Virus record (IMG/VR): IMGVR_UViG_3300017917_003143
Span: 279,633-343,632 of that record
DNA length: 64,000 nucleotides
Direction: 5' to 3' (one strand)
Under the pieces are notes generated by a model that made no database searches, was not told where the DNA came from, and was given only the letters and a program-made list of their open reading frames with translations. The position numbers and the translations under genes are program-made. Of the stretch, positions 11,232-37,545 are shown one piece after another (position 1 is the stretch's first letter; the number at the start of each line of letters is the position of its first letter).

Positions 11232-11266
11232 AAAATCCTCACAGCTATATACTGTGAGGATTTTTT
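11232..11266 (+). terminator. Terminator hairpin
   Basis: AAAATCCTCACAG-CTATATA-CTGTGAGGATTTT, 13-bp stem plus T tract. Confidence 0.85.
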
Positions 11267-11854
11267 ATGACTACAGCATTTGTATTAGGCAACGGCCGCA
11301 GCCGACAAACAGTTGATCTTGAACAGCTCAAACAGCGTGGGCCAGTCTATGCTTGCAACGCTATCTACAGAGAGTTCACGCCCACTGTGCTTGTGGCCAC
11401 CGATCGGCCCATAGCAGAAGCCATACAAAATTCAGGCTACAGTTTGCAAAACAGATTCCACACACGTCAGCCACTGCCCAATCTAGGTGCCCTGCCGTTG
11501 GATTCAAGATATCGAGGATTTAGTTCTGGGCCCAATGCTGTGGCCCTGGCCTGCAAAGATGGATTCCAGCGTATTTTTATGTTGGGATTTGATCTTGGAA
11601 CTACAAACGGACAGTTCAACAATCTTTACGCTGACACAGAATTTTACAAAAAAAGTTCAGCGCCGCCTACATTCAGCGGAAACTGGGTGAAACAGATAGT
11701 GCAACTGGCCAACGAGTACTCGACCAGAGAATTTATACGGGTAATGGGCCCTGAATCAGCCATGATACCCAGTTTTAACAACATTAAAAATCTACGTGAG
11801 ATGGCAATTCTGGAATTCAAAGACCTGCTAAATACATCAAAAGGCTTGCTATGA
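11267..11854 (+). CDS. CstII/Maf(DUF115)-like Rossmann-fold transferase
   Basis: AFVLGNGRSR...VYACNAIY...VLVATD...SSGPNAVALA...GFQRIFMLGFD, echoing the GNGPS / CN / SG..A..LG...I.L.G.D pattern of GT42/Maf proteins. Confidence 0.55.
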   Translation: MTTAFVLGNGRSRQTVDLEQLKQRGPVYACNAIYREFTPTVLVATDRPIAEAIQNSGYSLQNRFHTRQPLPNLGALPLDSRYRGFSSGPNAVALACKDGFQRIFMLGFDLGTTNGQFNNLYADTEFYKKSSAPPTFSGNWVKQIVQLANEYSTREFIRVMGPESAMIPSFNNIKNLREMAILEFKDLLNTSKGLL

Positions 11855-12802: not shown

Positions 12803-13224
12803 TGGGATACTTTGTCAAAAATCGCAGGCTACAGAGTGGCAGCTCAAGCATCGTAGTTCCGTCAGGTGATTCTGCTGATCGACCCGAAGCTCCGGTTTTT
12901 GGCAGTTTTCGTTACAACACAGACATAGGTACTTTGGAATTTTTCAACGGAACTGTGTTCAAGCAAGTTGGCCTGGGTGGCGAGCTCAATGTTGATGTTT
13001 ATTCAGCCACTGGCGACGGTTCCACTGTTACTTTTACTATTGGCAATACCACAGCGATCAGTGCAGATGATCAAGTCATCGTGTTTGTAGGTTCTATCTA
13101 TCAAGCACCTACTGCCAATTACACCATCACAGGTGCTGGGTACGATATCACATTTGGGTCTGCTCCTCCTGACGGTGAACCCATCAATATCATACGAAAT
13201 CTGGTAGCTCCCTCCACGCCCTAA
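12802..13224 (+). CDS. Stand-alone fibre module protein
   Basis: VP.G..A.RP...G..R.N...LE..G and GDG.T..FT...Q.P...Y...ITF..AP match internal modules of the 13252 and 17925 fibres. Confidence 0.7.
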   Translation: MGYFVKNRRLQSGSSSIVVPSGDSADRPEAPVFGSFRYNTDIGTLEFFNGTVFKQVGLGGELNVDVYSATGDGSTVTFTIGNTTAISADDQVIVFVGSIYQAPTANYTITGAGYDITFGSAPPDGEPINIIRNLVAPSTP

Positions 13225-13251
13225 ACCCATAAATACTAAAAAGGGTGATCA

Positions 13252-16200
13252 ATGGCGATTCAACGAGTTTCCGGCAACATTCTGCAGGACAACCTGCAAC
13301 GTGGTGCCAATCTAAGTATCCAGGGTAATTTAGCCTATTTTGACGTGGTTGATAACCGTGTGGGTATCAACACGAGCACACCCCTGCAAGATCTTTCGAT
13401 TGCTGGCAATCTTGGTGTTGGCAACTACATTGTTGTTGACGCTGAAGTTATTTCCAGTGCTGGCAATATTGTGTTGTTGCCCACAGGCAACGTCAGCGTA
13501 TCTAATGTTTACATACAAGATGTACTGGATCCTATCCAAGCACAAGATGCCGCTACAAAAAATTATGTTGACACATCATTAAGTTCATTCCTGACCTTTG
13601 AAGATGATGGTGCCAACACTACATCTATATCAGCTGGTGACACAGTATTCTTCAATGGCACAGCCAACGAAGTTTCAGTAGTGGTCAGCAGTCTGGCAGT
13701 GACTTTTGGTCTGCCTGATGATGTGATCGTTGGAAACTCATTGTCTGTCACTGGAAACTTTGATGCGGCCAATATCTACACCGGTGGTAACATTATCGCC
13801 ATAGGTAATATTGAAGGTGGTAATATTATTTCTGAAGGCGCCGTGATTGGCAACATACAGATCACAGGCAACATCACCGTCAACAATATTACCGTTTTAG
13901 GCAATACCACATCAAACAACGCCAGCATTGGAAACATACTCACAGTTGGTGGCAACATCACAGGTGGTAACTTGATATCCAACGCAGGTATCTATGGCAC
14001 CACAGCCAATGTCACAGGCAACGTATCAGTTGGTAACTTAACTATAACCAGCACCGCTGCCAACCGAGTGCTGTACACTGATGCTAATAAAAATATTACA
14101 ACCACTGCCAACTTCACCTTTGATGGTTCTCAGTTGGTACTCACAGGTACAGCCAATGTCAGTTCCAATGTGTTTGTTGGCAATCTCTATAGTGCGGCCT
14201 TGATCAATGCTGTAGGCAACATCACTGGATCCAATGTTATAGCCAACGGCAATGTCAATGGAAATTATGTCAACGTTACTAAGGATATCTATGCAGGCGG
14301 TAACGCTATCATTGATGGCAACTTGACAATCAATGGCGATCTGATTTATGAAAACGTCACTACACTAGCAGTTGAAGATCCAATCATCTCTTTGGGTCGT
14401 GGTGCTAACAACACTCCGTTGGTCAGCAATGATGGCAAGGACCGTGGTGAACAACTTTGGTATTATTCTGGCGCAGAAAAATCTGCGTTCATAGGGTATG
14501 ACAACTCGGCTGGCAACCTCATAGCCGCGGTAGATGTAACCATCGCCAACGAGATCGTTACAGTCAATCAGTATGGAACTTGGCAAGTTGGTAATATCTA
14601 TGCCCAAACTGCACTGATCACAGGCAATGTAAGTTTTGGAAATATTTCAACTCCAGGCCAGATATCAGCCACGGGCAACATCACCGGCGGTAATTTGATA
14701 TCCAACGCCATGGTATCAGCCGCTACCACAGTCAACGCCACGGGCAACGTCACGGGTGGTAACCTTGTTTCAAATGCGGCTATTTCTGCCGCGACTACTA
14801 TTTCTGCCACTGGTAATATCACTGGTGGCAACTTAATAAGCAACGCTAATATATCAGCATCGTCTGCTATCTTTGCCACAGGTAACATCACAGGTGGTAA
14901 TCTTGTAAGCAACGCTAATATTTCTGCCGCCAATGCTGTATTTGCTACAGGTAACATCACTGGTGGCAATTTGATATCCAACGCAGGTATCTTTGGAACC
15001 ACTGCTACCATAACTGGTAACATCATAGCTGGCAATGTTTCTACTCTGGGAGTAATCAACGTCACCGGCAATATCACCGGCGGTAACCTGATATCCAATG
15101 CCAACATATCGGCAACCAATGCTGTATTTGCTACCGGTAACGTCACTGCTGGTAATCTTGTAAGTAATGCTTCCATCTCGGCTGCTACAACAATCACAGC
15201 CGTGGGTAATATCACCGGCGGTAATCTTGTAAGCAACGCCAATATATCAGCCACTACCGCTGTATTTGCCACAGGTAACATCACTGGTGGTAATCTTGTT
15301 TCAAATGCCAATATATCAGCGGCATCGTTTATCTTTGCTACCGCTAATATAGTTGGTGGCAACCTAATATCCAATGCAAGAATAGTCGGAAATACTCTTG
15401 ACATTTATGGTGATGCACTGGTAGCTGGTAACTTGACTGTACAAGGAAACTTGACATACATCAACATTGATGATTTGAGAGTTGAGGATCCAATCATCCA
15501 GTTGGGTGGTGGTGCCAATGGTAATGCTTTGGTCACCAACGATGGTAAAGATCGTGGTACCCTACTGACCTATTACACCACAGGTCCTGGTAATGCGTTT
15601 GTTGGATGGGACAACAGTTCTGGTAACATGATTATTGCCAGCAACGTGAGCATAGCCAATGAAATTGTCACAGTCAATGCATATGGAACTTTCCAAGCTG
15701 GTAACATTTATGCTGAGAGTGCTGTCATAACAGGTAACACCAGCTTTGGTAATATTTCAACTCCAGGCCAGATATCAGCCACTGGTAACATCACTGGTGG
15801 TAACTTAATATCTAATGCCAACATATCAGCGGCATCTTTTGTATTTGCTACGGCCAACATTGTTGGTGGAAATCTCGTTTCCAATGCTAATATTTCTGCT
15901 ACCAATGCTGTGTTTGCCACAGGTAACATCACTGGTGGCAATTTGGTTTCAAATGCTTCCATTAGTGCGGCCACAACTATATCAGCCACAGGTAACATCA
16001 CTGGTGGTAATCTTGTATCCAATGCCGCAATATCTGCGGCCACTACAATCAATGCTACAGGTAACATCACAGGTGGTAATCTTGTAAGCAATGCCTCAAT
16101 CAGTGCGGCTACAACTATATCAGCTACTGGTAACATCACCGGTGGCAACATTGTGTCCAATGCTTTGGTAAGTGGAGCCAATGTACAGATTTCTACTCTG

Positions 16201-28955: not shown

Positions 28956-30283
28956 TAGTTATCTGCCTGAGGTTTAAGGATGTTACTGAGACCTTGACGC
29001 TGTGGAATAGGTCCTCGATCTGCTGTCTGTGTAGTAGCTGTGTTGTTGACGAAACTGCTACGCAAGGTCTTGTTGTCTGGTCCAGGTGTGAGATTGGTCC
29101 GTACAGCATCTTCAATCTTGAGCCAGGCCTTGCCATTGAACCGGAATAGACGGTTTGGAAAATAGTCTAATCGCAAAGCATAATCTCCATCGCGTGGATT
29201 TGGCGGAAACGATATACCAGGTGTCACTGGTAATCCGTTAGGTGCTATACCATCGCCTGTAAGATATCCAGAAGTATATCCATCTCCTCTAGGCGACACA
29301 TTGGCTTGATCTACATCAATGTTGGTATTGTCCACTGTGACCAAAGTATAGTCTGCAGTTGGTATAGAATTAGGATCTGCTGGTGTACCGTCGATATTGG
29401 TAGGTACGATGTAAAATTTAACAGTATCGTAACCACTTAGTGGCACCTCAAACTCAGCCTGCGCCAATATAGCATCGTTGAGTTCATAATCTTTCTTGCG
29501 TGTACCAATGGATTCCTGTATGGTTTCTGGGGTGTAAACTTCCCATTTGGTAGTATCTGTGATTGGCGTATCAACAGGAACATTTTCTTTGGCTTTGTAA
29601 TAAGTGTTACCATCCAGCACGATACTTCCACGTGGATAGTAATTACCTGGATCCCAGATGTTGTCCTGTGCAAATGGTTTGTTGAGTATGTCATTGTACT
29701 CTTGCGCACCAACCAAAGGTGTGGCCTTGACTCGCCACAAGTGTGGTAGCCAAGTTTGACTGAAACCTTCGCTGGCAAAAGCCGCGTCTTGGATCACATA
29801 GTATCTTGGGAGGGCTTTAGGCAACGCAGAGTTCAGTGGATTGTAATCTCGCAAGTTTGGAAATTCCAGCACATCACCGGCCATGAGCTTGCGACCCAAG
29901 GTATCAATCATGTCGTTGTAGTGGAACGTGATAAACAAGGTGTCGTTGTTTAGGAATAAACCAAACTGTGTAAGGTCAAAATCAATGTCTTGCTGATTGT
30001 ACACACCGCGCATGACATAGACGTTGGGACTGTAAGCACGATCTCTGTTTTCTATCAACAGCAGATCTTCAACAAACAGTGGATTTTCATAACTATACGC
30101 TGGCTGGGTGGCATCTTGTGTTCCGCCAGTCTGTGAGCTTGAGTCGTCACCGTGAGGCTTTGGACCCAGATATTTGTGGACATAGATGTCCAGCCCGCCT
30201 ACTGTGTACATTTCGGCTATGGTACGATCTAAAAACTTATAGTCGTTTTGGCGATTGGGGCGGTATAGTGATAATCTTGGCAT
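28955..30283 (-). CDS. gp14: Neck protein / head closure (T4 gp14-like), extended
   Basis: LTQFGLFL.ND.LFITFH, GRKLMAGDVLEFP, FSQTW.PHLW motifs; coupled to gp15. Confidence 0.75.
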   Translation of the reverse strand: MPRLSLYRPNRQNDYKFLDRTIAEMYTVGGLDIYVHKYLGPKPHGDDSSSQTGGTQDATQPAYSYENPLFVEDLLLIENRDRAYSPNVYVMRGVYNQQDIDFDLTQFGLFLNNDTLFITFHYNDMIDTLGRKLMAGDVLEFPNLRDYNPLNSALPKALPRYYVIQDAAFASEGFSQTWLPHLWRVKATPLVGAQEYNDILNKPFAQDNIWDPGNYYPRGSIVLDGNTYYKAKENVPVDTPITDTTKWEVYTPETIQESIGTRKKDYELNDAILAQAEFEVPLSGYDTVKFYIVPTNIDGTPADPNSIPTADYTLVTVDNTNIDVDQANVSPRGDGYTSGYLTGDGIAPNGLPVTPGISFPPNPRDGDYALRLDYFPNRLFRFNGKAWLKIEDAVRTNLTPGPDNKTLRSSFVNNTATTQTADRGPIPQRQGLSNILKPQADN

Positions 30284-30317
30284 AATTTTTGAGCTCTAAA
30301 ACTATTTATTGCTAATC

Positions 30318-30346
30318 TTGACAACAAACTTGTAAGCAACTATAAT
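30318..30346 (+). promoter_or_regulatory. Sigma70 early promoter
   Basis: TTGACA (30318-30323), 17-nt spacer, TATAAT (30341-30346); ATG 6 nt later. Confidence 0.9.
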
Positions 30347-30352
30347 AAAATC

Positions 30353-30613
30353 ATGAACATGGATCAGAGCTTGGCTCACAGCATTGATGAACTAAGAAAA
30401 CAGATAAGCCAAATCAATGCCAAACAGCGGGCAGATCTGCAGAAAATGTTAAACCACTGTCAACATCTTTGGGCAGAAATGAGCAAAGAGCATGTGCGTT
30501 GTCGCAGGGTTTGGCGTCTGACTCCAAAGTATTTGGATTTGGAACAAGAGCTAAAAGACACCCTTAACACAGCGCAACAGCACGTGATTTTGGCTACACT
30601 CATGGGTGGTTGA
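30353..30613 (+). CDS. Early hypothetical protein (86 aa)
   Basis: ORF directly behind a consensus sigma70 promoter. Confidence 0.7.
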   Translation: MNMDQSLAHSIDELRKQISQINAKQRADLQKMLNHCQHLWAEMSKEHVRCRRVWRLTPKYLDLEQELKDTLNTAQQHVILATLMGG

Positions 30614-30638
30614 CCAGAAATCCAAAAAGTAATATAAT
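30610..30638 (+). promoter_or_regulatory. Sigma70 early promoter
   Basis: TTGACC (30610-30615), 17-nt spacer, TATAAT (30633-30638). Confidence 0.85.
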
Positions 30639-30663
30639 TACACATTAGATCATAGGAGCCTGT

Positions 30664-31809
30664 ATGAAAACTGCTACCAAATTTGTCGCTGTCAAACCAC
30701 TGAACCCTCGCAGTCCAGACACCAAATACACTGGACTTGAACCACAGTGGAAAACCCAACCCACTGAAAATCGTGTCAGTGCGCTGAGCGGTGCTTTTTC
30801 TTGGTACAATTATCACTATGGCAAAAAAGAAGCCAAGGACATGATCGTCCAGTGGCTCGAACATCATGGTCGCAGTAAAGATGCCAAAAAGTTCCGAGGC
30901 GTGCCGGACAGCCAAGTCCGGCTGACTCCTGCTTGGTTAGCTCGCATGAGCTTGGTAGGGCTGGATCTGTCAGAACACGAAATGATCCATCTCGACGACC
31001 AGATCAACAAGATGCTGGCTGTCAAACAAGAAGCCAAAGTTGAAAAAACCACAGAAGAAGTCGCTGTGGCAAAAGTCACCATCCAGGACCGACTGCGTGA
31101 GAAAGTCCAGGAATGCGCCGGAGAGCTCGAAGGCTTGTTTGATGATTTTGTCGCCGATGGCGCTAAGATGTCGGCGAGCTGGAAACCCATCGCTACTATC
31201 CGTGGCATGAACGTTGCTCCGCAAATGGTTGGCAGTATCGCTGAAGTATGGCGTGCCAAGCTGGCTGAGTTTGAAGAAGTGCTGGAAGGAAAAGATGCAC
31301 AGTTGGTCGAAGGCTATTCAAACTTCAGTAAAATCCAGATTAAAAACTTGGTAAAATTTGCTGAACAAGTGATCAACGATTGCGGTGCTTATGTCCAGAT
31401 CAAGAAAGTGGAACGCAAGCCACGTGCCAAGAAGGCTGTGAGCCCAGAAAAACAATCAAGCAAATTCAAGTTCCTCAAGGAATTTCCTGAGCTTAAACTG
31501 GTCAGCGAAACACCGGCAAAACTCGTGGGTGCCAGCGAAGCATGGTTGTATGATACCAAGAAACGCAAGCTGATCCACGTCGTGGCAGATCAACACTTGG
31601 GTACATTCAGCGTCAAAGGCTCGAGCATCGTGGGCTTTGACACAGGCGGTAGCAATCAAAAAACCCTGCGCAAGCCCGCAGAACAGCTCAAAGGCTTGCT
31701 GTCCGGTGGAAAACCGGCGGCCCGCAAGTATTTCAAGGATATCAAATCCACAGAAGTCAAGTTCAATGGGCGTGGCAATGAGAACTTGATCATCCTCAAA
31801 GCCTACTAA
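30664..31809 (+). CDS. Early hypothetical protein, Lys-rich C-terminus
   Basis: 381 aa; AGGAG SD; function not recognised. Confidence 0.75.
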   Translation: MKTATKFVAVKPLNPRSPDTKYTGLEPQWKTQPTENRVSALSGAFSWYNYHYGKKEAKDMIVQWLEHHGRSKDAKKFRGVPDSQVRLTPAWLARMSLVGLDLSEHEMIHLDDQINKMLAVKQEAKVEKTTEEVAVAKVTIQDRLREKVQECAGELEGLFDDFVADGAKMSASWKPIATIRGMNVAPQMVGSIAEVWRAKLAEFEEVLEGKDAQLVEGYSNFSKIQIKNLVKFAEQVINDCGAYVQIKKVERKPRAKKAVSPEKQSSKFKFLKEFPELKLVSETPAKLVGASEAWLYDTKKRKLIHVVADQHLGTFSVKGSSIVGFDTGGSNQKTLRKPAEQLKGLLSGGKPAARKYFKDIKSTEVKFNGRGNENLIILKAY

Positions 31810-31833
31810 ATACTGGGGCATAGGAGTGCCCCA
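31807..31833 (+). promoter_or_regulatory. Late motif plus hairpin over gp13 ribosome-binding site
   Basis: TAAATA 31807-31812; stem TGGGGCA (31814-31820) / TGCCCCA (31827-31833) with loop TAGGAG. Confidence 0.65.
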
Positions 31834-32603
31834 TGGCTGAAGCTAACGCATCAACATTAGAAATTTTAAAACAAAACCTCATCGAGTATGTTCGCTTGAC
31901 CTTGGGCGATCAGATCGTTGATCTCGAGCTGGACCCAGCACATTACGAAGCCGCATATCAGCGCACCATTGGCGTGTATCGCCAACGTGCCGAAAATGCC
32001 TATGAGGAAAGTTATATTTTCTTAGAAATGGTGCAAGACGTCAACGTTTATACTCTACCTCAAGAAGTACAGAGTGTGCGTCAACTGTTCCGTAGAACCA
32101 TTGGCAACATGCAAGGACCTTACTCTACCAGTTTTGATCCTTTCTCTAGTGCCACGCTAAACACTTATCTGTTAAACTACAGCAGTGCTGGTGGTCTGGC
32201 AACATATGATTTTTATACCCAGTATGTTGAACTTGCGGCTCGCATGTTTGGTGGATTCGTTAACTACACTTGGAATCCTGTGACCAAGCAACTACAGATA
32301 ATGCGCGATCCCAAAGGTTCAGGCGAAACTATCCTGGTTTGGTGCTACAACTTGAAACCAGAAATTACCTTGCTGAGTGATTTCCAAATTCAGCAATGGG
32401 TGCGAGATTACATGGTAGCCGCTTGTAAAATGATCATAGGTGAAGCACGTGAAAAATTTGCCCAGATCGCCGGACCACAAGGCGGAACCAGCCTAAACGG
32501 TGCTGCCTTGAAGCAAGAAGCACAAGCCCAGATGGACATGAAGATTGAAGAACTCAAACTTTATGTAGACGGTAGCCAGCCACTTACCTTTGTTATTGGC
32601 TAA
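31833..32603 (+). CDS. gp13: Neck protein / head-tail adaptor (T4 gp13-like)
   Basis: YVRLTLG..IVDLELD, QWVRDY.VA.CKMIIGEAREKF...AGPQGG.SLNG motifs. Confidence 0.85.
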   Translation: MAEANASTLEILKQNLIEYVRLTLGDQIVDLELDPAHYEAAYQRTIGVYRQRAENAYEESYIFLEMVQDVNVYTLPQEVQSVRQLFRRTIGNMQGPYSTSFDPFSSATLNTYLLNYSSAGGLATYDFYTQYVELAARMFGGFVNYTWNPVTKQLQIMRDPKGSGETILVWCYNLKPEITLLSDFQIQQWVRDYMVAACKMIIGEAREKFAQIAGPQGGTSLNGAALKQEAQAQMDMKIEELKLYVDGSQPLTFVIG

Positions 32604-32631
32604 ACTTTCTCTTTTAATATAAAGAATATCA

Positions 32632-32640
32632 TGCTATAAT
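32632..32640 (+). promoter_or_regulatory. Extended -10 sigma70 promoter
   Basis: TGcTATAAT, 6 nt before ATG 32647; no convincing -35. Confidence 0.55.
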
Positions 32641-32646
32641 GTCCTT

Positions 32647-33174
32647 ATGGACATCATGATTGACATCGAAACCTGCGGTACAGGACCCGAAGCCTGTATC
32701 TTGACCATTGCCGCCCAGTGTTTCGATCCCTTGCGGCGCACTGAGCTCGAGCAAGAGCGTCAATACTATGCCCGTGTAGATCCCGGCAGTCAACCCGACC
32801 GACGTGTTGAACAAATGACCATAGACTGGTGGGCCACCCAACCCAAAGAAGCACAAGAAGAAGCCTTTGGGGAAGAAGGTCGTGTACCACTCAAACAAGC
32901 ATTAGAAGAACTGGGTCGGATGATCTGGCAGAGCAAACGCTTTTGGGCCAACGGTCCGACCTTTGATGCCAACATTTTAGAGCATGCTTACAAGAGCTAC
33001 AACATGCCCTTGCCTTGGCAATTTTACAATGTGCGCGATGCCCGCACCGTCTACAGTCTTTGTCCAGGACTAAACAAATACCCTGCCAGCCATCATGCGC
33101 TGGAAGACTGCCGCAGGCAGATTTACCTGCTGTGGGATACTCTTGAATTTTTAAAAATAAAGGAACTTGTATGA
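32647..33174 (+). CDS. DEDDh 3'-5' exonuclease (DexA/RNase AS-like)
   Basis: MIDIET, WANGPTFD..IL, RDART, HHALED motifs. Confidence 0.85.
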   Translation: MDIMIDIETCGTGPEACILTIAAQCFDPLRRTELEQERQYYARVDPGSQPDRRVEQMTIDWWATQPKEAQEEAFGEEGRVPLKQALEELGRMIWQSKRFWANGPTFDANILEHAYKSYNMPLPWQFYNVRDARTVYSLCPGLNKYPASHHALEDCRRQIYLLWDTLEFLKIKELV

Positions 33175-33830
33175 TCATTGGAGTTTGTGGATTCATTGGA
33201 TCTGGTAAAGATACCATCGCTGATTACCTTGTGAATATACACGAATTTCGTAGAGAAAGTTTTGCAGGCACCCTCAAAGATGCTTGCGCGGCTGTGTTTG
33301 GCTGGGATCGTACCATGCTGGAAGGGCGTACCAAGCAAAGCCGAGAGTGGCGTGATCAGATCGACGAGTGGTGGAGCAAGCGTTTGGGCCTAGCAGTGAC
33401 GCCTCGTTGGATACTACAGCAGTGGGGCACAGAAGTGTGCCGCAGAGGCTTCCATGATGACATTTGGATTGCCAGCTTGGAAAACAAACTACGGACATCA
33501 AAAGACAGCGTAGTGATCAGCGACTGTAGATTCCCTAATGAGATCAAAGCCATTAGAAATCAAGGGGGCATTGTAATACGAGTGGTGCGAGGACCTGAGC
33601 CTGCGTGGTATGATGATGCTGTGTCTATGAATGCTGGACCCACAAACATGCGTTGGTCAATAGCTAAGATGCATATGGAAAAGCTCAATATCCATGCCAG
33701 CGAAACTGCTTGGGTGGGCACTGAGTTTGATGCGGTAATTGACAACAATGGAACTATGGATCAGCTATATCAGCAGATCAACGATCTTCTTCAAGATCTC
33801 CGCGCTTCCAAGGCAAGTCCGCTCGAGTGA
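33171..33830 (+). CDS. Deoxynucleoside monophosphate kinase (T4 gp1-like)
   Basis: GVCGFIGSGKDT P-loop, PR.ILQ.WGTEVCR, VVISDCRFPNE, H.SE. Confidence 0.92.
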   Translation: MIIGVCGFIGSGKDTIADYLVNIHEFRRESFAGTLKDACAAVFGWDRTMLEGRTKQSREWRDQIDEWWSKRLGLAVTPRWILQQWGTEVCRRGFHDDIWIASLENKLRTSKDSVVISDCRFPNEIKAIRNQGGIVIRVVRGPEPAWYDDAVSMNAGPTNMRWSIAKMHMEKLNIHASETAWVGTEFDAVIDNNGTMDQLYQQINDLLQDLRASKASPLE

Positions 33831-34125
33831 TTTCGATACTGCAATTTAAACAAATACTCTTGAGATTGCGTAGTTCTGAATTGTTAAGATTGCCATCGAC
33901 ATGATACACTAAAATTTGTGCGGTGCTTTTAGCTCTAAACCCACATCGATCACAAGTCATTTTCTTTTTATAACCAGCACTCTGCCAACGCGGTGTCGCT
34001 GGTTTTTGTTTGCGGCCTTTGCGTATGCAGGCATCACACCTACTGCGATAGTAAATTTTATCATCTCGATAGCAGTTGATTGCCGACGGATTGCGGTTAC
34101 AGGCTTTGCATATGGGTCTTGACAT
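33778..34125 (-). CDS. Zn-ribbon / HNH-like endonuclease
   Basis: CKAC..., CDRCGF...YHVDGNLNN...NL..ICLNC; minus-strand TAAATA 5 nt before ATG. Confidence 0.7.
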   Translation of the reverse strand: MSRPICKACNRNPSAINCYRDDKIYYRSRCDACIRKGRKQKPATPRWQSAGYKKKMTCDRCGFRAKSTAQILVYHVDGNLNNSELRNLKSICLNCSIEITRADLPWKRGDLEEDR

Positions 34126-34227
34126 GCACTTATTTAAGACAAAACCTTACGTAAGGGCAAGGATAGACGGCGGTTTTGGTGCCTGCCGCTAAATATGAAT
34201 AGCACTTTTTATTAAAGGAACAGACAC

Positions 34228-37200
34228 ATGGCACTAGTTTCCCCAGGCGTAGAAGTTACAATCATTGACGAAAGTAACTACTTACCAGCCCCAACTAATT
34301 CAGTACCGTTTATCTTGATCGCGACAGCGCAGAACAAGATCAGCGGTAGCGGTGTAGGCGTAGCAGCCGGCACTACAGCGGCCAACGCTAACAGAGTTTA
34401 TTTAATCTCTTCACAGAGAGATTTGGTCAATACGTTTGGTAACCCATTCTTCTACAAGACCACAGCAGGTACACCAATCAATGGTTACGAGCTCAACGAA
34501 TATGGCTTGCTTGCCGCTTACTCAGTCTTGGGTATCAGCAATCGCGCTTACATTCAACGTGCCGACATTGACTTGAGTGAACTCACAGCTACTTTAACCC
34601 GTCCTACAGGCGAACCAAACAATGGTACTTACTGGTTAGATACTAGTTCTACTGCCTGGGGTATTTTTGAGTGGAGTTATACCACTTCAGCGTTCACACT
34701 CAAGACACCTATCGTCATCACTGACGAAAACGACCTTGATGGTGGGTTCCCGAAAGATTCTATCGGTAACATTGGTGACTATTGCGTCAATGCCTTGAAC
34801 ATCAACAACTATGGATATTTCAAGTCTCCAGGTTTGACAGTGACAGACTCTGGCGGTTCAGTTGAAATCGTTCCAGCCAATACTTGGGTATTGATTGGTA
34901 GCGACGACTGGAAAAATTCATGGCCTACAGTGATTGCCAACAACGCCAGCCCAGCATTGACCATTGGTCAATCAATCTTGCTCAATGGCAACATAGTCAC
35001 AGCCACAGGAACCACAGTCACACAATTTGCGATAGATATCAATGATGCAGGTATTCCTGGTGTGTATGCCAATGTAGTTGGTAACAAACTACAGATCTAT
35101 GTTGACGGTAACGGTACCAATGATTTGTCTACTGACGACGGCAACGGTATCCTTAGCATTGAAAACAACAGCGGTACTTTGTTGACTGCTCTAGGTATTA
35201 CAGCTACAGTTTACTATGCTCCTACCTTACAACAGAGTCCAAACTACACTGTTCCACAGTGGAGATCGACTAGTGCCGAACCACATCCAACTGGTTCTGT
35301 ATGGAATAAGATCAATAACGTAAACCAAGGTGCAGATCTTGTTGTTAAAAAGTACGACAGCACAGTAGGATTGTTTGTACAACAAAATTGCCCACTTTAT
35401 GCCAACGATCAAAGCGCAAACAAGGCTTTAGATCCAGCTGGTGGTGGTAGAAACATCACTGTTGGTACTACCTACGCTCAATACAATGTTGAAGTTCTTG
35501 ATGCACTAACTGGTGCCGCGACTTTCACAATGAAACTGTTTGAACGTGCAGCCACAGGCAACACTATCATCACAGGTAACACTACAACTCCTGTGTTTGT
35601 AAACGGTAATACTTTTGAAATATCTTGGAGCACTAAAAACAGCGATGTTTTAAGTGGACCAGTCACAGCTACCTTGGCTGGAACTGATGCCACAGCATTT
35701 GTCACAGCATTCTTGGCAGCAATTCCAAGTGGTGCACCTGTCACAGCTGGCGTAACATCAGACGGTGCAGTACAGATACAGCACACACAAGGCGGTGATG
35801 TGATTCTCAAAGATATCACAGGAACTCCAGTGGATGATGCCGGTATCACTACTTCGGTTGCAGGAGTACGTGCTGGCAAAGACAATGATTTGATCCTCAG
35901 CAACTGGGTCACATTGTTCCCAGATTATTTCCCACAAGGTGTAGCCCCTGATCAAGATCCAACTGATGGACGTCTATGGTACTACTCAGCCACAGATCAA
36001 GTTGACATCATGATCCAGAACAACGGTCAATGGGTTGGCTATCAGACAGTGAACTCAGATGTTCGTGGATTTGATCTAATGGCCACAGACCCTAATGGTC
36101 CAATTATTTCTGTGACTGCCCCAACTATAAACAGTGAGGGTAATCCTTTGGTTTATGGCGACCTGTGGATTGATACTTCTGATCTTGAAGCATATCCCAT
36201 CATCAAACGCTATCAATCAGTTGACGGACAAGACCAATGGGTATTGATTGACAACACCGATCAAACCACTGAAAATGGTGTGTTGTTTGCTGATTTCCGT
36301 TGGGCACCCAATGGATCAACAAATCCAATCACAGATCCAATTCCAACAATCAAGAGCTTGCTAAATTCAAGTTACCTTGATCCAGATGCTCCAACTTCTA
36401 CCTTGTATCCTGAAGGCATGTTAGGTTTCAACCTACGCCGTTCCGGATTCAATGTCAAGAGCTTCCAAGTTGATTACTTCAACACACGTGATTTCCCTGA
36501 CATGGATCCAATGGTTGTAACACAGACCAATGCTTGGGTCACAGCCAGCGGATTGCAAGACAACGGTGCTCCATACATGGGCCGTAAAGCAGTGCGCAAT
36601 CTTGTTGTACAGGCAATGAAGGCAAGTATTGATGGTAATCAAGATCTGCGCGAAGAACAACGCCAGTTCAACTTGATTGCTACACCTAACTATCCTGAGT
36701 TGATTCCTAACATGATAGCACTCAACAACGAGCGTAGCCAAACAGCATTCGTGGTTGGTGACACACCAATGCGCTTGCCTGACACAGCTGACGCGATCAC
36801 TGCTTGGGCAACCAATGCCAATGGTGTTGGACTCGATAGCGAAGATGGTTTGGTTACATCCGATCCGTACTTGGGCACATTCTACCCAAGCTGTGAAACC
36901 ACAGACTTGACAGGTTCCACAGTGGTACAACCACCGAGCCACATGATGTTGCGTACTATCCTGCGCAGTGACGAAGTGAGCTTCCCTTGGTTGGCACCAG
37001 CTGGTACACGTCGTGGTATCGTTGACAACGCATTTGCGTTGGGTTATGTAAATGCACAGACAGGACAGTTTGTTTCAACAGCTATCCGTCAAAGCATACG
37101 TGACACCTTGTATGAAAACAAGATCAATCCGATCACATTCATTCCAGGTGCTGGCATTACTAACTACGGTAACAAGACTGAAGCCGCTACACCAAGCGCA

Positions 37201-37545
37201 CTTGATCGTATCAACGTAGCACGATTGGTTTGCTTCATCCGTGCAAGACTTGAAAGCATTGGTAAGAGCTTTGTGTTTGAACCCAATGATCAGATCACAC
37301 GTGATGAGATCAGCAACGCTATCAGTAACTTGATGAACGACTTGGTTGCCAAGCGTGGTATCTATGATTACTTGGTTGTGTGTGATGATACTAACAATAC
37401 ACCGTCACGTATCGATCGCAACGAGCTTTGGGTCGATATTGCTATCGAGCCGGTTAAAGCAGTTGAATTCATCTACATACCAGTTCGAATCAAGAACACA
37501 GGTGAGATATCTTCCGGGCAGGTTGCGACATCAACTACCGTCTAA
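34228..37545 (+). CDS. gp18: Tail sheath protein (T4 gp18-like), enlarged
   Basis: MALVSPGVEVTIIDES N-terminus; FNLIATP.YPE, PWLAPAG..RG, LYENKINPI, ALDRINVARL, LWVDIAIEPVKAVEFIYIP C-terminus. Confidence 0.95.
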   Translation: MALVSPGVEVTIIDESNYLPAPTNSVPFILIATAQNKISGSGVGVAAGTTAANANRVYLISSQRDLVNTFGNPFFYKTTAGTPINGYELNEYGLLAAYSVLGISNRAYIQRADIDLSELTATLTRPTGEPNNGTYWLDTSSTAWGIFEWSYTTSAFTLKTPIVITDENDLDGGFPKDSIGNIGDYCVNALNINNYGYFKSPGLTVTDSGGSVEIVPANTWVLIGSDDWKNSWPTVIANNASPALTIGQSILLNGNIVTATGTTVTQFAIDINDAGIPGVYANVVGNKLQIYVDGNGTNDLSTDDGNGILSIENNSGTLLTALGITATVYYAPTLQQSPNYTVPQWRSTSAEPHPTGSVWNKINNVNQGADLVVKKYDSTVGLFVQQNCPLYANDQSANKALDPAGGGRNITVGTTYAQYNVEVLDALTGAATFTMKLFERAATGNTIITGNTTTPVFVNGNTFEISWSTKNSDVLSGPVTATLAGTDATAFVTAFLAAIPSGAPVTAGVTSDGAVQIQHTQGGDVILKDITGTPVDDAGITTSVAGVRAGKDNDLILSNWVTLFPDYFPQGVAPDQDPTDGRLWYYSATDQVDIMIQNNGQWVGYQTVNSDVRGFDLMATDPNGPIISVTAPTINSEGNPLVYGDLWIDTSDLEAYPIIKRYQSVDGQDQWVLIDNTDQTTENGVLFADFRWAPNGSTNPITDPIPTIKSLLNSSYLDPDAPTSTLYPEGMLGFNLRRSGFNVKSFQVDYFNTRDFPDMDPMVVTQTNAWVTASGLQDNGAPYMGRKAVRNLVVQAMKASIDGNQDLREEQRQFNLIATPNYPELIPNMIALNNERSQTAFVVGDTPMRLPDTADAITAWATNANGVGLDSEDGLVTSDPYLGTFYPSCETTDLTGSTVVQPPSHMMLRTILRSDEVSFPWLAPAGTRRGIVDNAFALGYVNAQTGQFVSTAIRQSIRDTLYENKINPITFIPGAGITNYGNKTEAATPSALDRINVARLVCFIRARLESIGKSFVFEPNDQITRDEISNAISNLMNDLVAKRGIYDYLVVCDDTNNTPSRIDRNELWVDIAIEPVKAVEFIYIPVRIKNTGEISSGQVATSTTV

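What the first reader, a model, noticed from the sequence alone, without database searches (positions are those of the whole stretch)
31807..31835. Hairpin over the gp13 RBS that may block translation from early read-through RNA
Seen: a 7-bp stem TGGGGCA/TGCCCCA holds the SD (AGGAG) in its loop and pairs the A of ATG. The late motif ends 2 nt before the 5' arm, and the upstream gene has a sigma70 promoter with no terminator between. Knowledge: T4 genes e, soc, 49 and I-TevI use RBS hairpins that form only on early transcripts. Inference: a late transcript starting inside the 5' arm cannot fold the full hairpin, so gp13 is translated only late.
Basis: partly seen in the sequence, partly recalled or inferred. 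Interest (0 to 1): 0.6.

Follow-up and report, generated by a model that had tools for sequence, protein, structure and literature searches.

The report
Late-promoter-relieved hairpin masking neck-gene RBS

Summary
Arms 31814-31820 and 31827-31833 pair perfectly, or 8 bp with a U·G pair. The loop is AGGA, the SD is AGGAG, and A of the ATG is paired. Folding energy is -14.1 kcal/mol, and pairing probability is about 1.0 in long RNAs.

One 7-bp stem alone is only marginally unusual. Relatives make it convincing: 27 of 37 distinct sequences from environmental relatives keep a hairpin at the same place with different stem sequences. Swapping arms between relatives destroys folding (0 of 2000 permutations as good as native).

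TAAATA (31807-31812) is the core of a T4-type late promoter. It is enriched 16-32 nt upstream of structural genes, and the genome encodes a gp55-like sigma factor. With T4 spacing, the late start is G31818, inside the 5' arm. The cost of opening SD plus AUG then falls from 11.9 to 4.9 kcal/mol, much like T4 gene e run through the same script.

The upstream 381-aa gene has a conserved sigma70-type promoter, no late motif and no convincing terminator before gp13. RaK2-like isolates mask the same gene differently, with the promoter inside the hairpin.

The start site, the read-through and the translational effect are all unmeasured. Verdict: a real element and a new member of a known kind.

The parts
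30318..30346 (+). Sigma70-type promoter (TTGACA-17-TATAAT, 12 of 12) in front of the 86-aa ORF; the first promoter of the early-type unit that runs towards gp13
   Evidence: sequence
30353..30613 (+). 86-aa ORF of unknown function
   Evidence: weak homologues at the same place in some relatives
30610..30638 (+). Sigma70-type promoter (GGTTGACCAGAAA...TATAAT, 11 of 12) for the 381-aa gene. It is conserved 20-33 nt before the ATG in many relatives
   Evidence: TTGACCAG is the commonest -35 form in this genome
30664..31809 (+). 381-aa gene of unknown function (PHROG 11903), a homologue of PA5oct gp292. It has no late motif upstream. Its stop TAA lies inside the late motif
31806..31812 (+). Predicted T4-type late promoter core CTAAATA (TAAATA invariant in all 37 relatives)
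   Evidence: gp55-like sigma; ATAAATA proposed as the late motif in related phages CBB and GAP32 (PMC5259590)
31818..31818 (+). Predicted late transcription start (sixth base after the motif), inside the 5' arm. This is inferred, not measured
   Evidence: T4 spacing -13..-6 (PMC1524935); folding of truncated RNAs
31814..31833 (+). RNA hairpin: 5' arm 31814-31821, loop AGGA 31822-31825, 3' arm 31826-31833. Energy -14.1 kcal/mol; pairing probability about 1.0 in long RNA
   Evidence: conservation and arm-swap test
31822..31826 (+). Shine-Dalgarno AGGAG, with a 6-nt spacer to the ATG. AGGA is in the tetraloop and the last G is in the closing pair
31833..32603 (+). gp13-like neck protein / head-tail adaptor (256 aa)
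   Evidence: PHROG 211, E 1e-28; annotated neck protein, and a virion protein by MS in PA5oct; collinear BLASTP matches to T4 gp13, E 7e-6 and 0.007
32632..32640 (+). Extended -10 promoter TGcTATAAT of the exonuclease gene, 6 nt before its ATG. Relatives keep TTGACA-17-TGnTATAAT here, so the downstream early-type genes do not depend on read-through across gp13
32647..33830 (+). 3'-5' exonuclease (32647-33174) and dNMP kinase (33171-33830), early-type genes with no late motif

Best explanation
The window is the last 64 kb of a 343.6-kb uncultured jumbo myovirus, distantly related to the RaK2/PA5oct/Atu_ph07 group. Its gp13-like neck gene is a lone late gene sitting between two units driven by sigma70-type promoters.

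Host-RNAP transcripts started at 30318-30346 or 30610-30638 cover the 86-aa and 381-aa genes. No convincing terminator was found downstream, so they should run into gp13. On such long RNAs the 8-bp hairpin 31814-31833 forms almost always. It locks the SD into a tetraloop and its closing pair, and it pairs the A of the AUG, so 30S subunits cannot load.

Late in infection, RNAP carrying the phage's gp55-like sigma factor recognises TAAATA (31807-31812) and starts about six bases downstream, at G31818. That RNA lacks half of the 5' arm. The hairpin collapses and the 15-nt leader presents a free SD with a 6-nt spacer.

Shown here: the hairpin, its conservation by compensatory change, the motif and its genome-wide behaviour, the sigma factor gene, the promoter classes, and the energetics.

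Inferred: the start site, the existence of read-through RNA, and the size of the translational effect.
For: Structure: stem probability is 0.98-1.0 for the six inner pairs, 0.91 for the closing U·G pair and 0.73-0.77 for the outermost pair, in 400-nt, 800-nt and promoter-to-gene RNAs. It falls to 0.65 with +1 at 31818 and 0.01 with +1 at 31819. The cost of opening SD plus AUG is 11.9 against 4.9 kcal/mol.

Positive control: T4 gene e in the same script gives a hairpin of -14.9 kcal/mol and opening costs of 15.5 and 14.7 (long) against 4.7 and 2.0 (late). That hairpin lowers lysozyme synthesis 100-fold (PMC3014915).

Conservation: 80 IMG/VR loci carry gp13 at 71-87% identity. Of 37 distinct leaders, 27 have a hairpin of -5 kcal/mol or better. 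Stems include UGGGAAC/GUUCCCA, GGGGAC/GUCCCC, AUAGGAAC/GUUCCUAU, UAAGGAAC/GUUCCUUA, CAAGAGCG/CGCUCUUG and CAAGGGU/ACCCUUG.

Arm-swap test: native mean energy is -7.25 against -3.9 for chimeras; 0 of 2000 permutations reach the native value.

Geometry: the 5' arm always starts 1-3 nt and ends 6-9 nt after TAAATA. A T4-like start removes 4.0 of 6.8 pairs on average, and the mean opening cost falls from 11.6 to 3.8 kcal/mol.

Promoter: TAAATA heptamers are about 8-fold enriched upstream of genes and sit 16-32 nt before structural gene starts. A gp55-like sigma factor is encoded (E 2.9e-24 and 3.1e-65). Sigma70-type and TAAATA promoters are nearly exclusive: 24 and 36 genes, 1 with both. Spacing is from PMC1524935.

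Context: TAAATA occurs on the + strand between 30000 and 34300 only at gp13 and at the sheath gene. The sigma70-type promoter before the 381-aa gene is conserved.

Parallel solution: in BF, XaC1, EJP2 and fEgEco12, and in IMG/VR loci among L092-L108 (12 distinct leaders), gp13 has a 10-15-bp hairpin. TAAATA lies in its 5' arm or loop and the SD in its 3' arm, again with compensatory change.

Natural controls: Atu_ph07 and Phosso have a divergent upstream gene and no hairpin.

Genome-wide: 7 of 36 TAAATA genes gain at least 7 kcal/mol of RBS accessibility on the late transcript, against 15 of 363 controls (Fisher p = 0.0017).
Against: There are no RNA data. The genome comes from a pond metagenome and no RNA run holds it. 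The start site, the read-through and the timing are therefore all predictions.

The gp55-like factor of this lineage could use a different spacing from T4.

With +1 at 31817 or 31818 a residual 4-5-bp stem still forms (probability 0.65-0.69), so release may be partial.

The bases just after TAAATA are GC-rich (CTGGGGC), unlike other late promoters here and unlike the T4 preference for AT (PMC2988020). The promoter may therefore be weak.

Ten of 37 relatives lack a good hairpin. Many of these have same-strand radical-SAM genes inserted between the 381-aa gene and gp13, where read-through should still occur. PA5oct has the same-strand homologue upstream and no hairpin.

Rho-dependent termination before gp13 cannot be excluded.

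The covariance-model alignment gave only 60.6% paired cells because the stem register varies between relatives. That formal pair count is inconclusive.
Confidence: 0.68

Rival explanations
1. Translational coupling device. The hairpin would make gp13 translation on polycistronic RNA depend on ribosomes finishing the 381-aa gene. Its stop codon lies 5 nt before the stem, so terminating ribosomes would melt the stem and hand over to the gp13 RBS.
For: The upstream stop TAA is embedded in TAAATA, 4-7 nt before the stem, in the window and in most relatives. Two relatives whose stop lies farther away have weak hairpins: L036 at -5.0 and L053 at -0.6. The hairpin is weaker where other genes are inserted after the 381-aa gene.
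Against: With the stop in the A site, the ribosomal helicase sits about 11 nt from the first base of the P-site codon. That is position 31814, the first base of the stem (this position is from general knowledge, not tested here). At most the outermost pair would open, and that pair has a probability of only 0.73 anyway.

The hairpin travels with gp13 when a different gene lies upstream, as in L038, L049, L065 and L072.

Coupling does not explain why the 5' arm always straddles the predicted late start. It also does not explain why RaK2-like phages put the promoter inside the hairpin.
Confidence: 0.1
2. 3'-end element of the upstream early message. The hairpin would act as a stabiliser against 3' exonucleases, a processing site, or a U-tract-less pause or termination signal for early transcripts. 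Masking of the RBS would be a side effect.
For: The hairpin sits directly after the stop codon of the upstream gene. In the RaK2-like clade the equivalent hairpin is followed by 5-8 T and looks like a true intrinsic terminator.
Against: In the window and its clade no T-run follows the stem on the + strand, so the intrinsic-terminator pattern is not met. The loop always holds the SD and the 3' arm is the SD-AUG spacer. The element is therefore positioned relative to the gp13 start and not to the upstream stop.
Confidence: 0.1
3. Operator for an RNA-binding translational repressor, as with T4 gp43/gp32/RegA or the MS2 coat protein hairpin. The hairpin would be bound by a phage protein to set the neck protein dose.
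For: A small hairpin at the start site with a conserved purine-rich loop resembles such operators. The inner stem (GGAAC/GUUCC or GGGAC/GUCCC) is fairly conserved.
Against: Loop conservation is explained by the SD itself. Some clades have quite different stems and loop sizes of 3-9 nt. If the late start is T4-like, the hairpin is absent from the very RNA that makes gp13. No candidate binding protein was found or sought.
Confidence: 0.07
4. Chance palindrome, or a minus-strand terminator, with no role in gp13 expression.
For: The promoter/terminator scan lists the same repeat as a terminator-like site on the - strand. One 7-bp repeat is not rare: the window holds 49.
Against: The arms co-vary across relatives. 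The T-richness on the - strand is only the complement of TAAATA. No - strand gene converges on the site.
Confidence: 0.03

Closest known systems
T4 gene e (lysozyme) translation initiation region
   Same: An SD/AUG-occluding hairpin of similar strength forms on transcripts that come from upstream early promoters: -14.9 kcal/mol in T4 e, -14.1 here. A gp55-type late promoter is placed so that late RNA lacks the 5' strand. In T4 e the distal late promoter also starts inside the 5' arm. The predicted opening energies are alike.
   Different: In T4 e the SD and AUG lie in the 3' arm of a longer stem, and the two promoters lie in the 5' arm and the loop. Here the promoter lies just outside a minimal 8-bp stem, and the SD sits in a tetraloop. 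The regulated gene is a neck protein and not a lysis enzyme. Nothing here has been tested experimentally.
T4 soc, 49, I-TevI (and mobE, segB) RBS hairpins
   Same: They follow the same logic: long early or middle RNAs are translationally silent, and late-promoter RNAs are active (PMC3014915).
   Different: The genes and sequences are different, and the phage family is different (Straboviridae against an uncultured jumbo group). I did not refold those T4 sites.
gp13 leader hairpins of RaK2-like jumbo phages (Serratia BF, Xanthomonas XaC1, Escherichia EJP2 and fEgEco12)
   Same: The same gene is regulated, a (C)TAAATA motif is combined with an RBS-masking hairpin, and the gp13 - dNMP kinase - sheath order is shared.
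   Different: Their stem is 10-15 bp. The promoter is inside the 5' arm or the loop, the SD is in the 3' arm, and a T-run follows, so the element also looks like an intrinsic terminator. I found no paper describing it.
Translational-coupling hairpins (e.g. MS2 coat-replicase)
   Same: A hairpin masks the downstream RBS directly after an upstream stop codon.
   Different: Here the stem begins at the edge of a terminating ribosome's reach, and a dedicated promoter bypasses it.

Membership tests
T4-type RBS-occluding hairpin relieved by a late promoter (genes e, soc, 49, I-TevI) | A stable RNA helix sequesters the SD and/or the start codon on long transcripts | tested here: met
   -14.1 kcal/mol; pair probabilities of 0.91-1.0 for seven of the eight pairs and 0.73-0.77 for the outermost pair in long RNAs; 11.9 kcal/mol to open SD plus AUG
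T4-type RBS-occluding hairpin relieved by a late promoter (genes e, soc, 49, I-TevI) | A gp55-type late promoter motif is placed so that the late RNA lacks the 5' strand | tested here: met
   TAAATA ends at 31812. With T4 spacing of -13..-6, +1 is 31818, inside arm 31814-31821. The same geometry holds in 27 of 27 hairpin-bearing relatives. A gp55-like gene is present.
T4-type RBS-occluding hairpin relieved by a late promoter (genes e, soc, 49, I-TevI) | The measured late 5' end lies inside or downstream of the 5' strand | not testable with these tools
   No RNA run holds this genome
T4-type RBS-occluding hairpin relieved by a late promoter (genes e, soc, 49, I-TevI) | Early or middle transcripts from upstream read into the gene | tested here: inconclusive
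   Conserved sigma70-type promoters lie upstream, with no late motif and no convincing intrinsic terminator. The RNA itself has not been observed, and Rho termination is not excluded.
T4-type RBS-occluding hairpin relieved by a late promoter (genes e, soc, 49, I-TevI) | Translation is lower from long RNA than from late RNA | not testable with these tools
   Only thermodynamic prediction is available: a difference of about 7 kcal/mol, comparable to T4 e in the same script
Rho-independent terminator | A GC-rich stem is followed directly by a U-tract on the transcribed strand | tested here: not met
   The + strand sequence after the stem is GGCTGAAGC. The scan lists no + strand site here.
T4-like late promoter | A TATAAATA-like -10 box without a -35 box, upstream of structural genes, with a gp55 homologue encoded | tested here: met
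   Enrichment and positions; sigma factor. gp33 and gp45 homologues were not sought.
gp13 neck protein / head-tail adaptor Ad2 | Sequence homology to T4 gp13 and its family | tested here: met
   PHROG 211, E 1e-28. BLASTP to T4 gp13 gives collinear matches at E 7e-6 and 0.007. Pfam, NCBIfam and the PDB sequence search gave nothing.
Rfam RNA families | A match to any curated covariance model | tested here: not met
   No match at E up to 1 in 30200-34300

The most novel reading that the evidence does not exclude
The gp13 hairpin may be one instance of a general timing device in the whole RaK2/PA5oct-like jumbo phage supergroup. Late promoters would be built into or against RBS-masking (and sometimes terminating) hairpins, so that single late genes can sit inside early transcription units. 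The device would have been reinvented in at least two architectures for the same gene, and would be used at several other genes of this genome, such as genome position 95451 and window 13252.
Probability: 0.3. Interest if true: 0.6.

Novelty: new member of a known kind. Interest (0 to 1): 0.5.

Why it matters
The finding extends a classic T4 post-transcriptional timing mechanism to a distant and largely uncultured group of jumbo phages. It does so with unusually clean comparative support: dozens of natural compensatory variants, and a second architecture for the same gene in cultured RaK2-like phages.

It also explains how a late structural gene can sit between early-type genes without a terminator. 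It gives genome annotators a recognisable signature: TAAATA, then 1-3 nt, then a stem with GGAG in the loop, then ATG.

Finally, it points to cultured phages (BF, XaC1, EJP2, fEgEco12) in which the mechanism can be tested directly.

Tried and rejected
(1) Covariance-model route. Model R1 was built from the MAFFT alignment A1 and re-aligned as A2. Only 60.6% of cells paired, and the result barely exceeded the slid controls, because the stem register differs between relatives. I treat this count as inconclusive. I replaced it with an alignment-free arm-swap test.

(2) Idea that the exonuclease and dNMP kinase genes need early read-through across gp13. Rejected. The exonuclease gene has its own conserved TTGACA-17-TGnTATAAT promoter.

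(3) Expression data. No RNA run holds the genome. The PA5oct paper gives no late motif, and its supplements are not held. PA5oct lacks the hairpin anyway.

(4) Function of the 381-aa upstream protein. Pfam, NCBIfam and the protein atlas gave nothing. Only PHROG 11903 (unknown function) and PA5oct gp292 matched.

(5) Nucleotide search of the phage collection with the locus found no match.

(6) Minus-strand terminator reading. Rejected as a by-product of the complement of TAAATA.

(7) Hairpin strength against gene insertions between the 381-aa gene and gp13. Medians are -9.7 (abutting) and -5.0 (inserted), Mann-Whitney p = 5e-5. This is not corrected for phylogeny, and one locus (L073) was mislabelled as abutting. 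The inserted genes are same-strand radical-SAM genes, so the trend does not cleanly support or refute the model.
Full report
WHAT THE WINDOW IS. The window is the last 64 kb of a single 343,632-bp contig. The contig was assembled from a pond metagenome, and one DNA run holds 98% of its words. The gene content is that of a jumbo myovirus: a gp15-like sheath stabiliser, a gp13-like neck protein, a 1105-aa sheath and tube proteins. The closest cultured relatives of the gp13-like protein are PA5oct, Atu_ph07, XaC1 and the RaK2-like phages, at only 37-43% identity. No nucleotide match exists in the phage collection.

THE OBSERVATION. The sequence reads TAA-ATA-C, then TGGGGCA, TAGGAG, TGCCCCA, then TG.
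- The arms 31814-31820 and 31827-31833 are perfectly complementary.
- RNAfold adds a U·G pair, giving 8 bp with loop AGGA at -14.1 kcal/mol.
- The SD AGGAG (31822-31826) spans the loop and the closing pair. A31833 of the ATG is paired.
- As a lone sequence the hairpin is only moderately unusual. Six of 200 shuffles fold as well. The window holds 49 perfect 7-bp repeats against about 23 by chance, and 5 of 423 gene starts carry one.
- In long RNAs of 400 nt, 800 nt, or running from the early promoter, seven of the eight pairs have a probability of 0.91-1.0 and the outermost pair 0.73-0.77.

CONSERVATION. IMG/VR holds 379 relatives of this gp13. The best 80 (71-87% identity) were fetched. They give 37 distinct leader sequences.
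- TAAATA is invariant in all 37.
- In 27 of them a hairpin of -5 kcal/mol or better lies between TAAATA and the ATG.
- The stems differ between lineages in a compensatory way. Examples are UGGGAAC/GUUCCCA, GGGGAC/GUCCCC, GGGGGAAC/GUUCCCCC, AAGGGAAC/GUUCCCUU, AUAGGAAC/GUUCCUAU, UAAGGAAC/GUUCCUUA, CUGGGGC/GCUCCAG, and the unrelated CAAGAGCG/CGCUCUUG and CAAGGGU/ACCCUUG.
- A covariance-model alignment did not capture this, because the stem register shifts between relatives. It gave 60.6% paired cells, which I count as inconclusive.
- An alignment-free test did capture it. I joined the 5' half of each leader to the 3' half of every other leader. Native leaders fold at a mean of -7.25 kcal/mol and chimeras at -3.9. 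None of 2000 random re-pairings reached the native mean.

THE LATE PROMOTER.
- TAAATA-containing heptamers are about 8-fold enriched upstream of genes.
- They sit 16-32 nt before the starts of the structural genes of the window: 303, 4841, 11851, 13252, 17925, 21568, 25272, 30283(-), 31833, 34228, 37633 and 40812.
- The genome encodes a gp55-like late sigma factor at C1:272962-273801.
- In the related phages CBB and GAP32, ATAAATA was proposed as the late motif (PMC5259590).
- Sigma70-type promoters (24 genes, typically GGTTGACCAG...TATAAT) and TAAATA (36 genes) are almost mutually exclusive; only one gene has both.
- In T4 the box occupies -13 to -6 (PMC1524935; PMC2988020). The predicted start here is therefore G31818, the fifth base of the 5' arm.

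THE GEOMETRY IS CONSERVED. In all 27 hairpin-bearing relatives the 5' arm starts 1-3 nt after TAAATA and ends 6-9 nt after it. A T4-like start removes on average 4.0 of 6.8 pairs. The mean cost of opening the RBS falls from 11.6 to 3.8 kcal/mol.

For the window itself the figures are as follows:
- Opening SD plus AUG costs 11.9 kcal/mol on long RNA and 4.9 kcal/mol on late RNA.
- The residual stem has probability 0.65 with +1 at 31818.
- It has probability 0.01 with +1 at 31819.

As a positive control I ran T4 gene e through the same script. It gave a hairpin of -14.9 kcal/mol, and opening costs of 15.5 and 14.7 (long) against 4.7 and 2.0 (late). That T4 structure is documented to lower lysozyme synthesis 100-fold on early RNA (PMC3014915).

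THE CONTEXT.
- The 86-aa and 381-aa genes upstream are preceded by sigma70-type promoters scoring 12 of 12 and 11 of 12.
- The promoter before the 381-aa gene is conserved in many relatives.
- On the + strand between 30000 and 34300, TAAATA occurs only at gp13 and at the sheath gene.
- No convincing + strand terminator separates the promoters from gp13.
- I first thought the downstream exonuclease and dNMP kinase genes might need read-through across gp13. That is wrong. A conserved TTGACA-17-TGnTATAAT promoter lies 5-6 nt before the exonuclease ATG.
- gp13 is therefore a lone late gene between two sigma70-driven units, exposed to read-through from the left.

A SECOND ARCHITECTURE FOR THE SAME GENE. 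In Serratia phage BF, Xanthomonas phage XaC1 and Escherichia phages EJP2 and fEgEco12, and in IMG/VR loci among L092-L108 (12 distinct leaders), the gp13 start is preceded by a 10-15-bp hairpin. Its 5' arm or loop holds (C)TAAATA and its 3' arm holds the SD. A T-run follows, then the ATG. Compensatory change is seen again: CCCCUAAAUAU/AUGUUUAGGGG against CCCCUAUA/UAUAGGGG. Late transcripts would lack the 5' arm there too.

Atu_ph07 and Phosso have a divergently transcribed gene upstream and no such hairpin. PA5oct is an exception: it has the same-strand homologue of the 381-aa gene upstream and no hairpin.

WHAT DOES NOT FIT NEATLY.
- Ten of 37 leaders lack a good hairpin.
- Most of these come from loci where one or two same-strand radical-SAM genes are inserted between the 381-aa gene and gp13.
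- Hairpin strength is lower in insertion loci: median -5.0 against -9.7. L012 and L016 have identical gp13 proteins but hairpins of -2.0 and -11.4.
- Read-through should persist in these loci, so the simple model does not predict the loss. In L012 the whole leader differs from that of L016, so the cassette seems to have brought its own leader.
- Other insertion loci (L038, L049, L065, L072) keep the hairpin.
- The statistic is not corrected for phylogeny, and L073 was mislabelled.
- The GC-rich bases after TAAATA depart from the AT-rich norm of the other late promoters, which suggests a trade-off between promoter strength and the stem.

RIVALS.
- Translational coupling. This is disfavoured because the stem begins at the edge of a terminating ribosome's reach. 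Coupling also does not explain the promoter geometry.
- A 3'-end or terminator role. The window's clade has no U-tract, and the element is positioned relative to the gp13 start.
- A repressor operator. This cannot be excluded, but it is unnecessary.
- Chance. This is excluded by the co-variation of the arms.
- Rfam has no matching family, and I found no paper describing the element.

VERDICT. The kind of mechanism is known from T4 genes e, soc, 49 and I-TevI. This is a new, well-conserved member of that kind in a distant jumbo phage group. Start-site mapping and reporter tests in cultured relatives are the decisive next experiments.

Noticed in passing
window 32632-32656: The exonuclease gene has an extended -10 promoter (TGcTATAAT) ending 6 nt before its first ATG (32647), so the mRNA may be leaderless or nearly so. 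Relatives keep TTGACA-17-TGnTATAAT at this spot. A second in-frame ATG (32656, ATGATYG) is conserved in all relatives.
   Followed up: partly
genome C1:95390-95453 (outside the window): A 1481-aa gene has a 10-bp stem (AGCCTATTCC/GGAATAGGCT) with TAAATA in the loop and the SD in the 3' arm, the classic T4 gene e layout. The cost of opening the RBS is 15.0 kcal/mol on long RNA and 3.6 on late RNA.
   Followed up: partly
window 13200-13254; genome starts 178285, 264885(-), 272825(-), 126300: Further TAAATA-preceded genes have an RBS predicted to be 7-13 kcal/mol more accessible on the late transcript than on long RNA. This applies to 7 of 36 late-motif genes against 15 of 363 controls (Fisher p = 0.0017).
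   Followed up: partly
window 11233-11269: A terminator-like hairpin (ATCCTCACAG/CTGTGAGGAT plus TTTTTT) lies directly before the ATG of the 195-aa gene at 11267. The SD (GAGGA) is in its 3' arm. This layout resembles the RaK2-like gp13 leaders but has no TAAATA in the loop.
   Followed up: no
L012, L038, L044, L049, L065, L066, L068, L069, L071, L073 (between the 381-aa homologue and gp13): In the loci checked (L038, L044, L049, L065, L071), one or two radical-SAM-domain genes are inserted on the same strand, starting 5-10 nt after the stop of the 381-aa gene. The insertion hot spot coincides with the TGG-TAA-ATA junction.
   Followed up: partly
window 33778-34125 (- strand) and 34145-34162: A 115-aa ORF lies on the opposite strand in the gap between the dNMP kinase and sheath genes. 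It has only a faint NCBIfam hit. A hairpin plus T-run lies just upstream of it on the - strand. A gap of about 400 nt at this place is conserved in relatives.
   Followed up: no
window 31806-31812 and the homologous sites in L001-L080: The stop codon of the upstream gene is usually embedded in the late promoter core (TGG-TAA-ATA or CAA-TAA-ATA), whatever the upstream gene is.
   Followed up: partly
window 34228-37545: The tail sheath protein is unusually long at 1105 aa (PHROG 10581, E 1.8e-220). Only its C-terminal 100 residues match the Pfam sheath domain.
   Followed up: no
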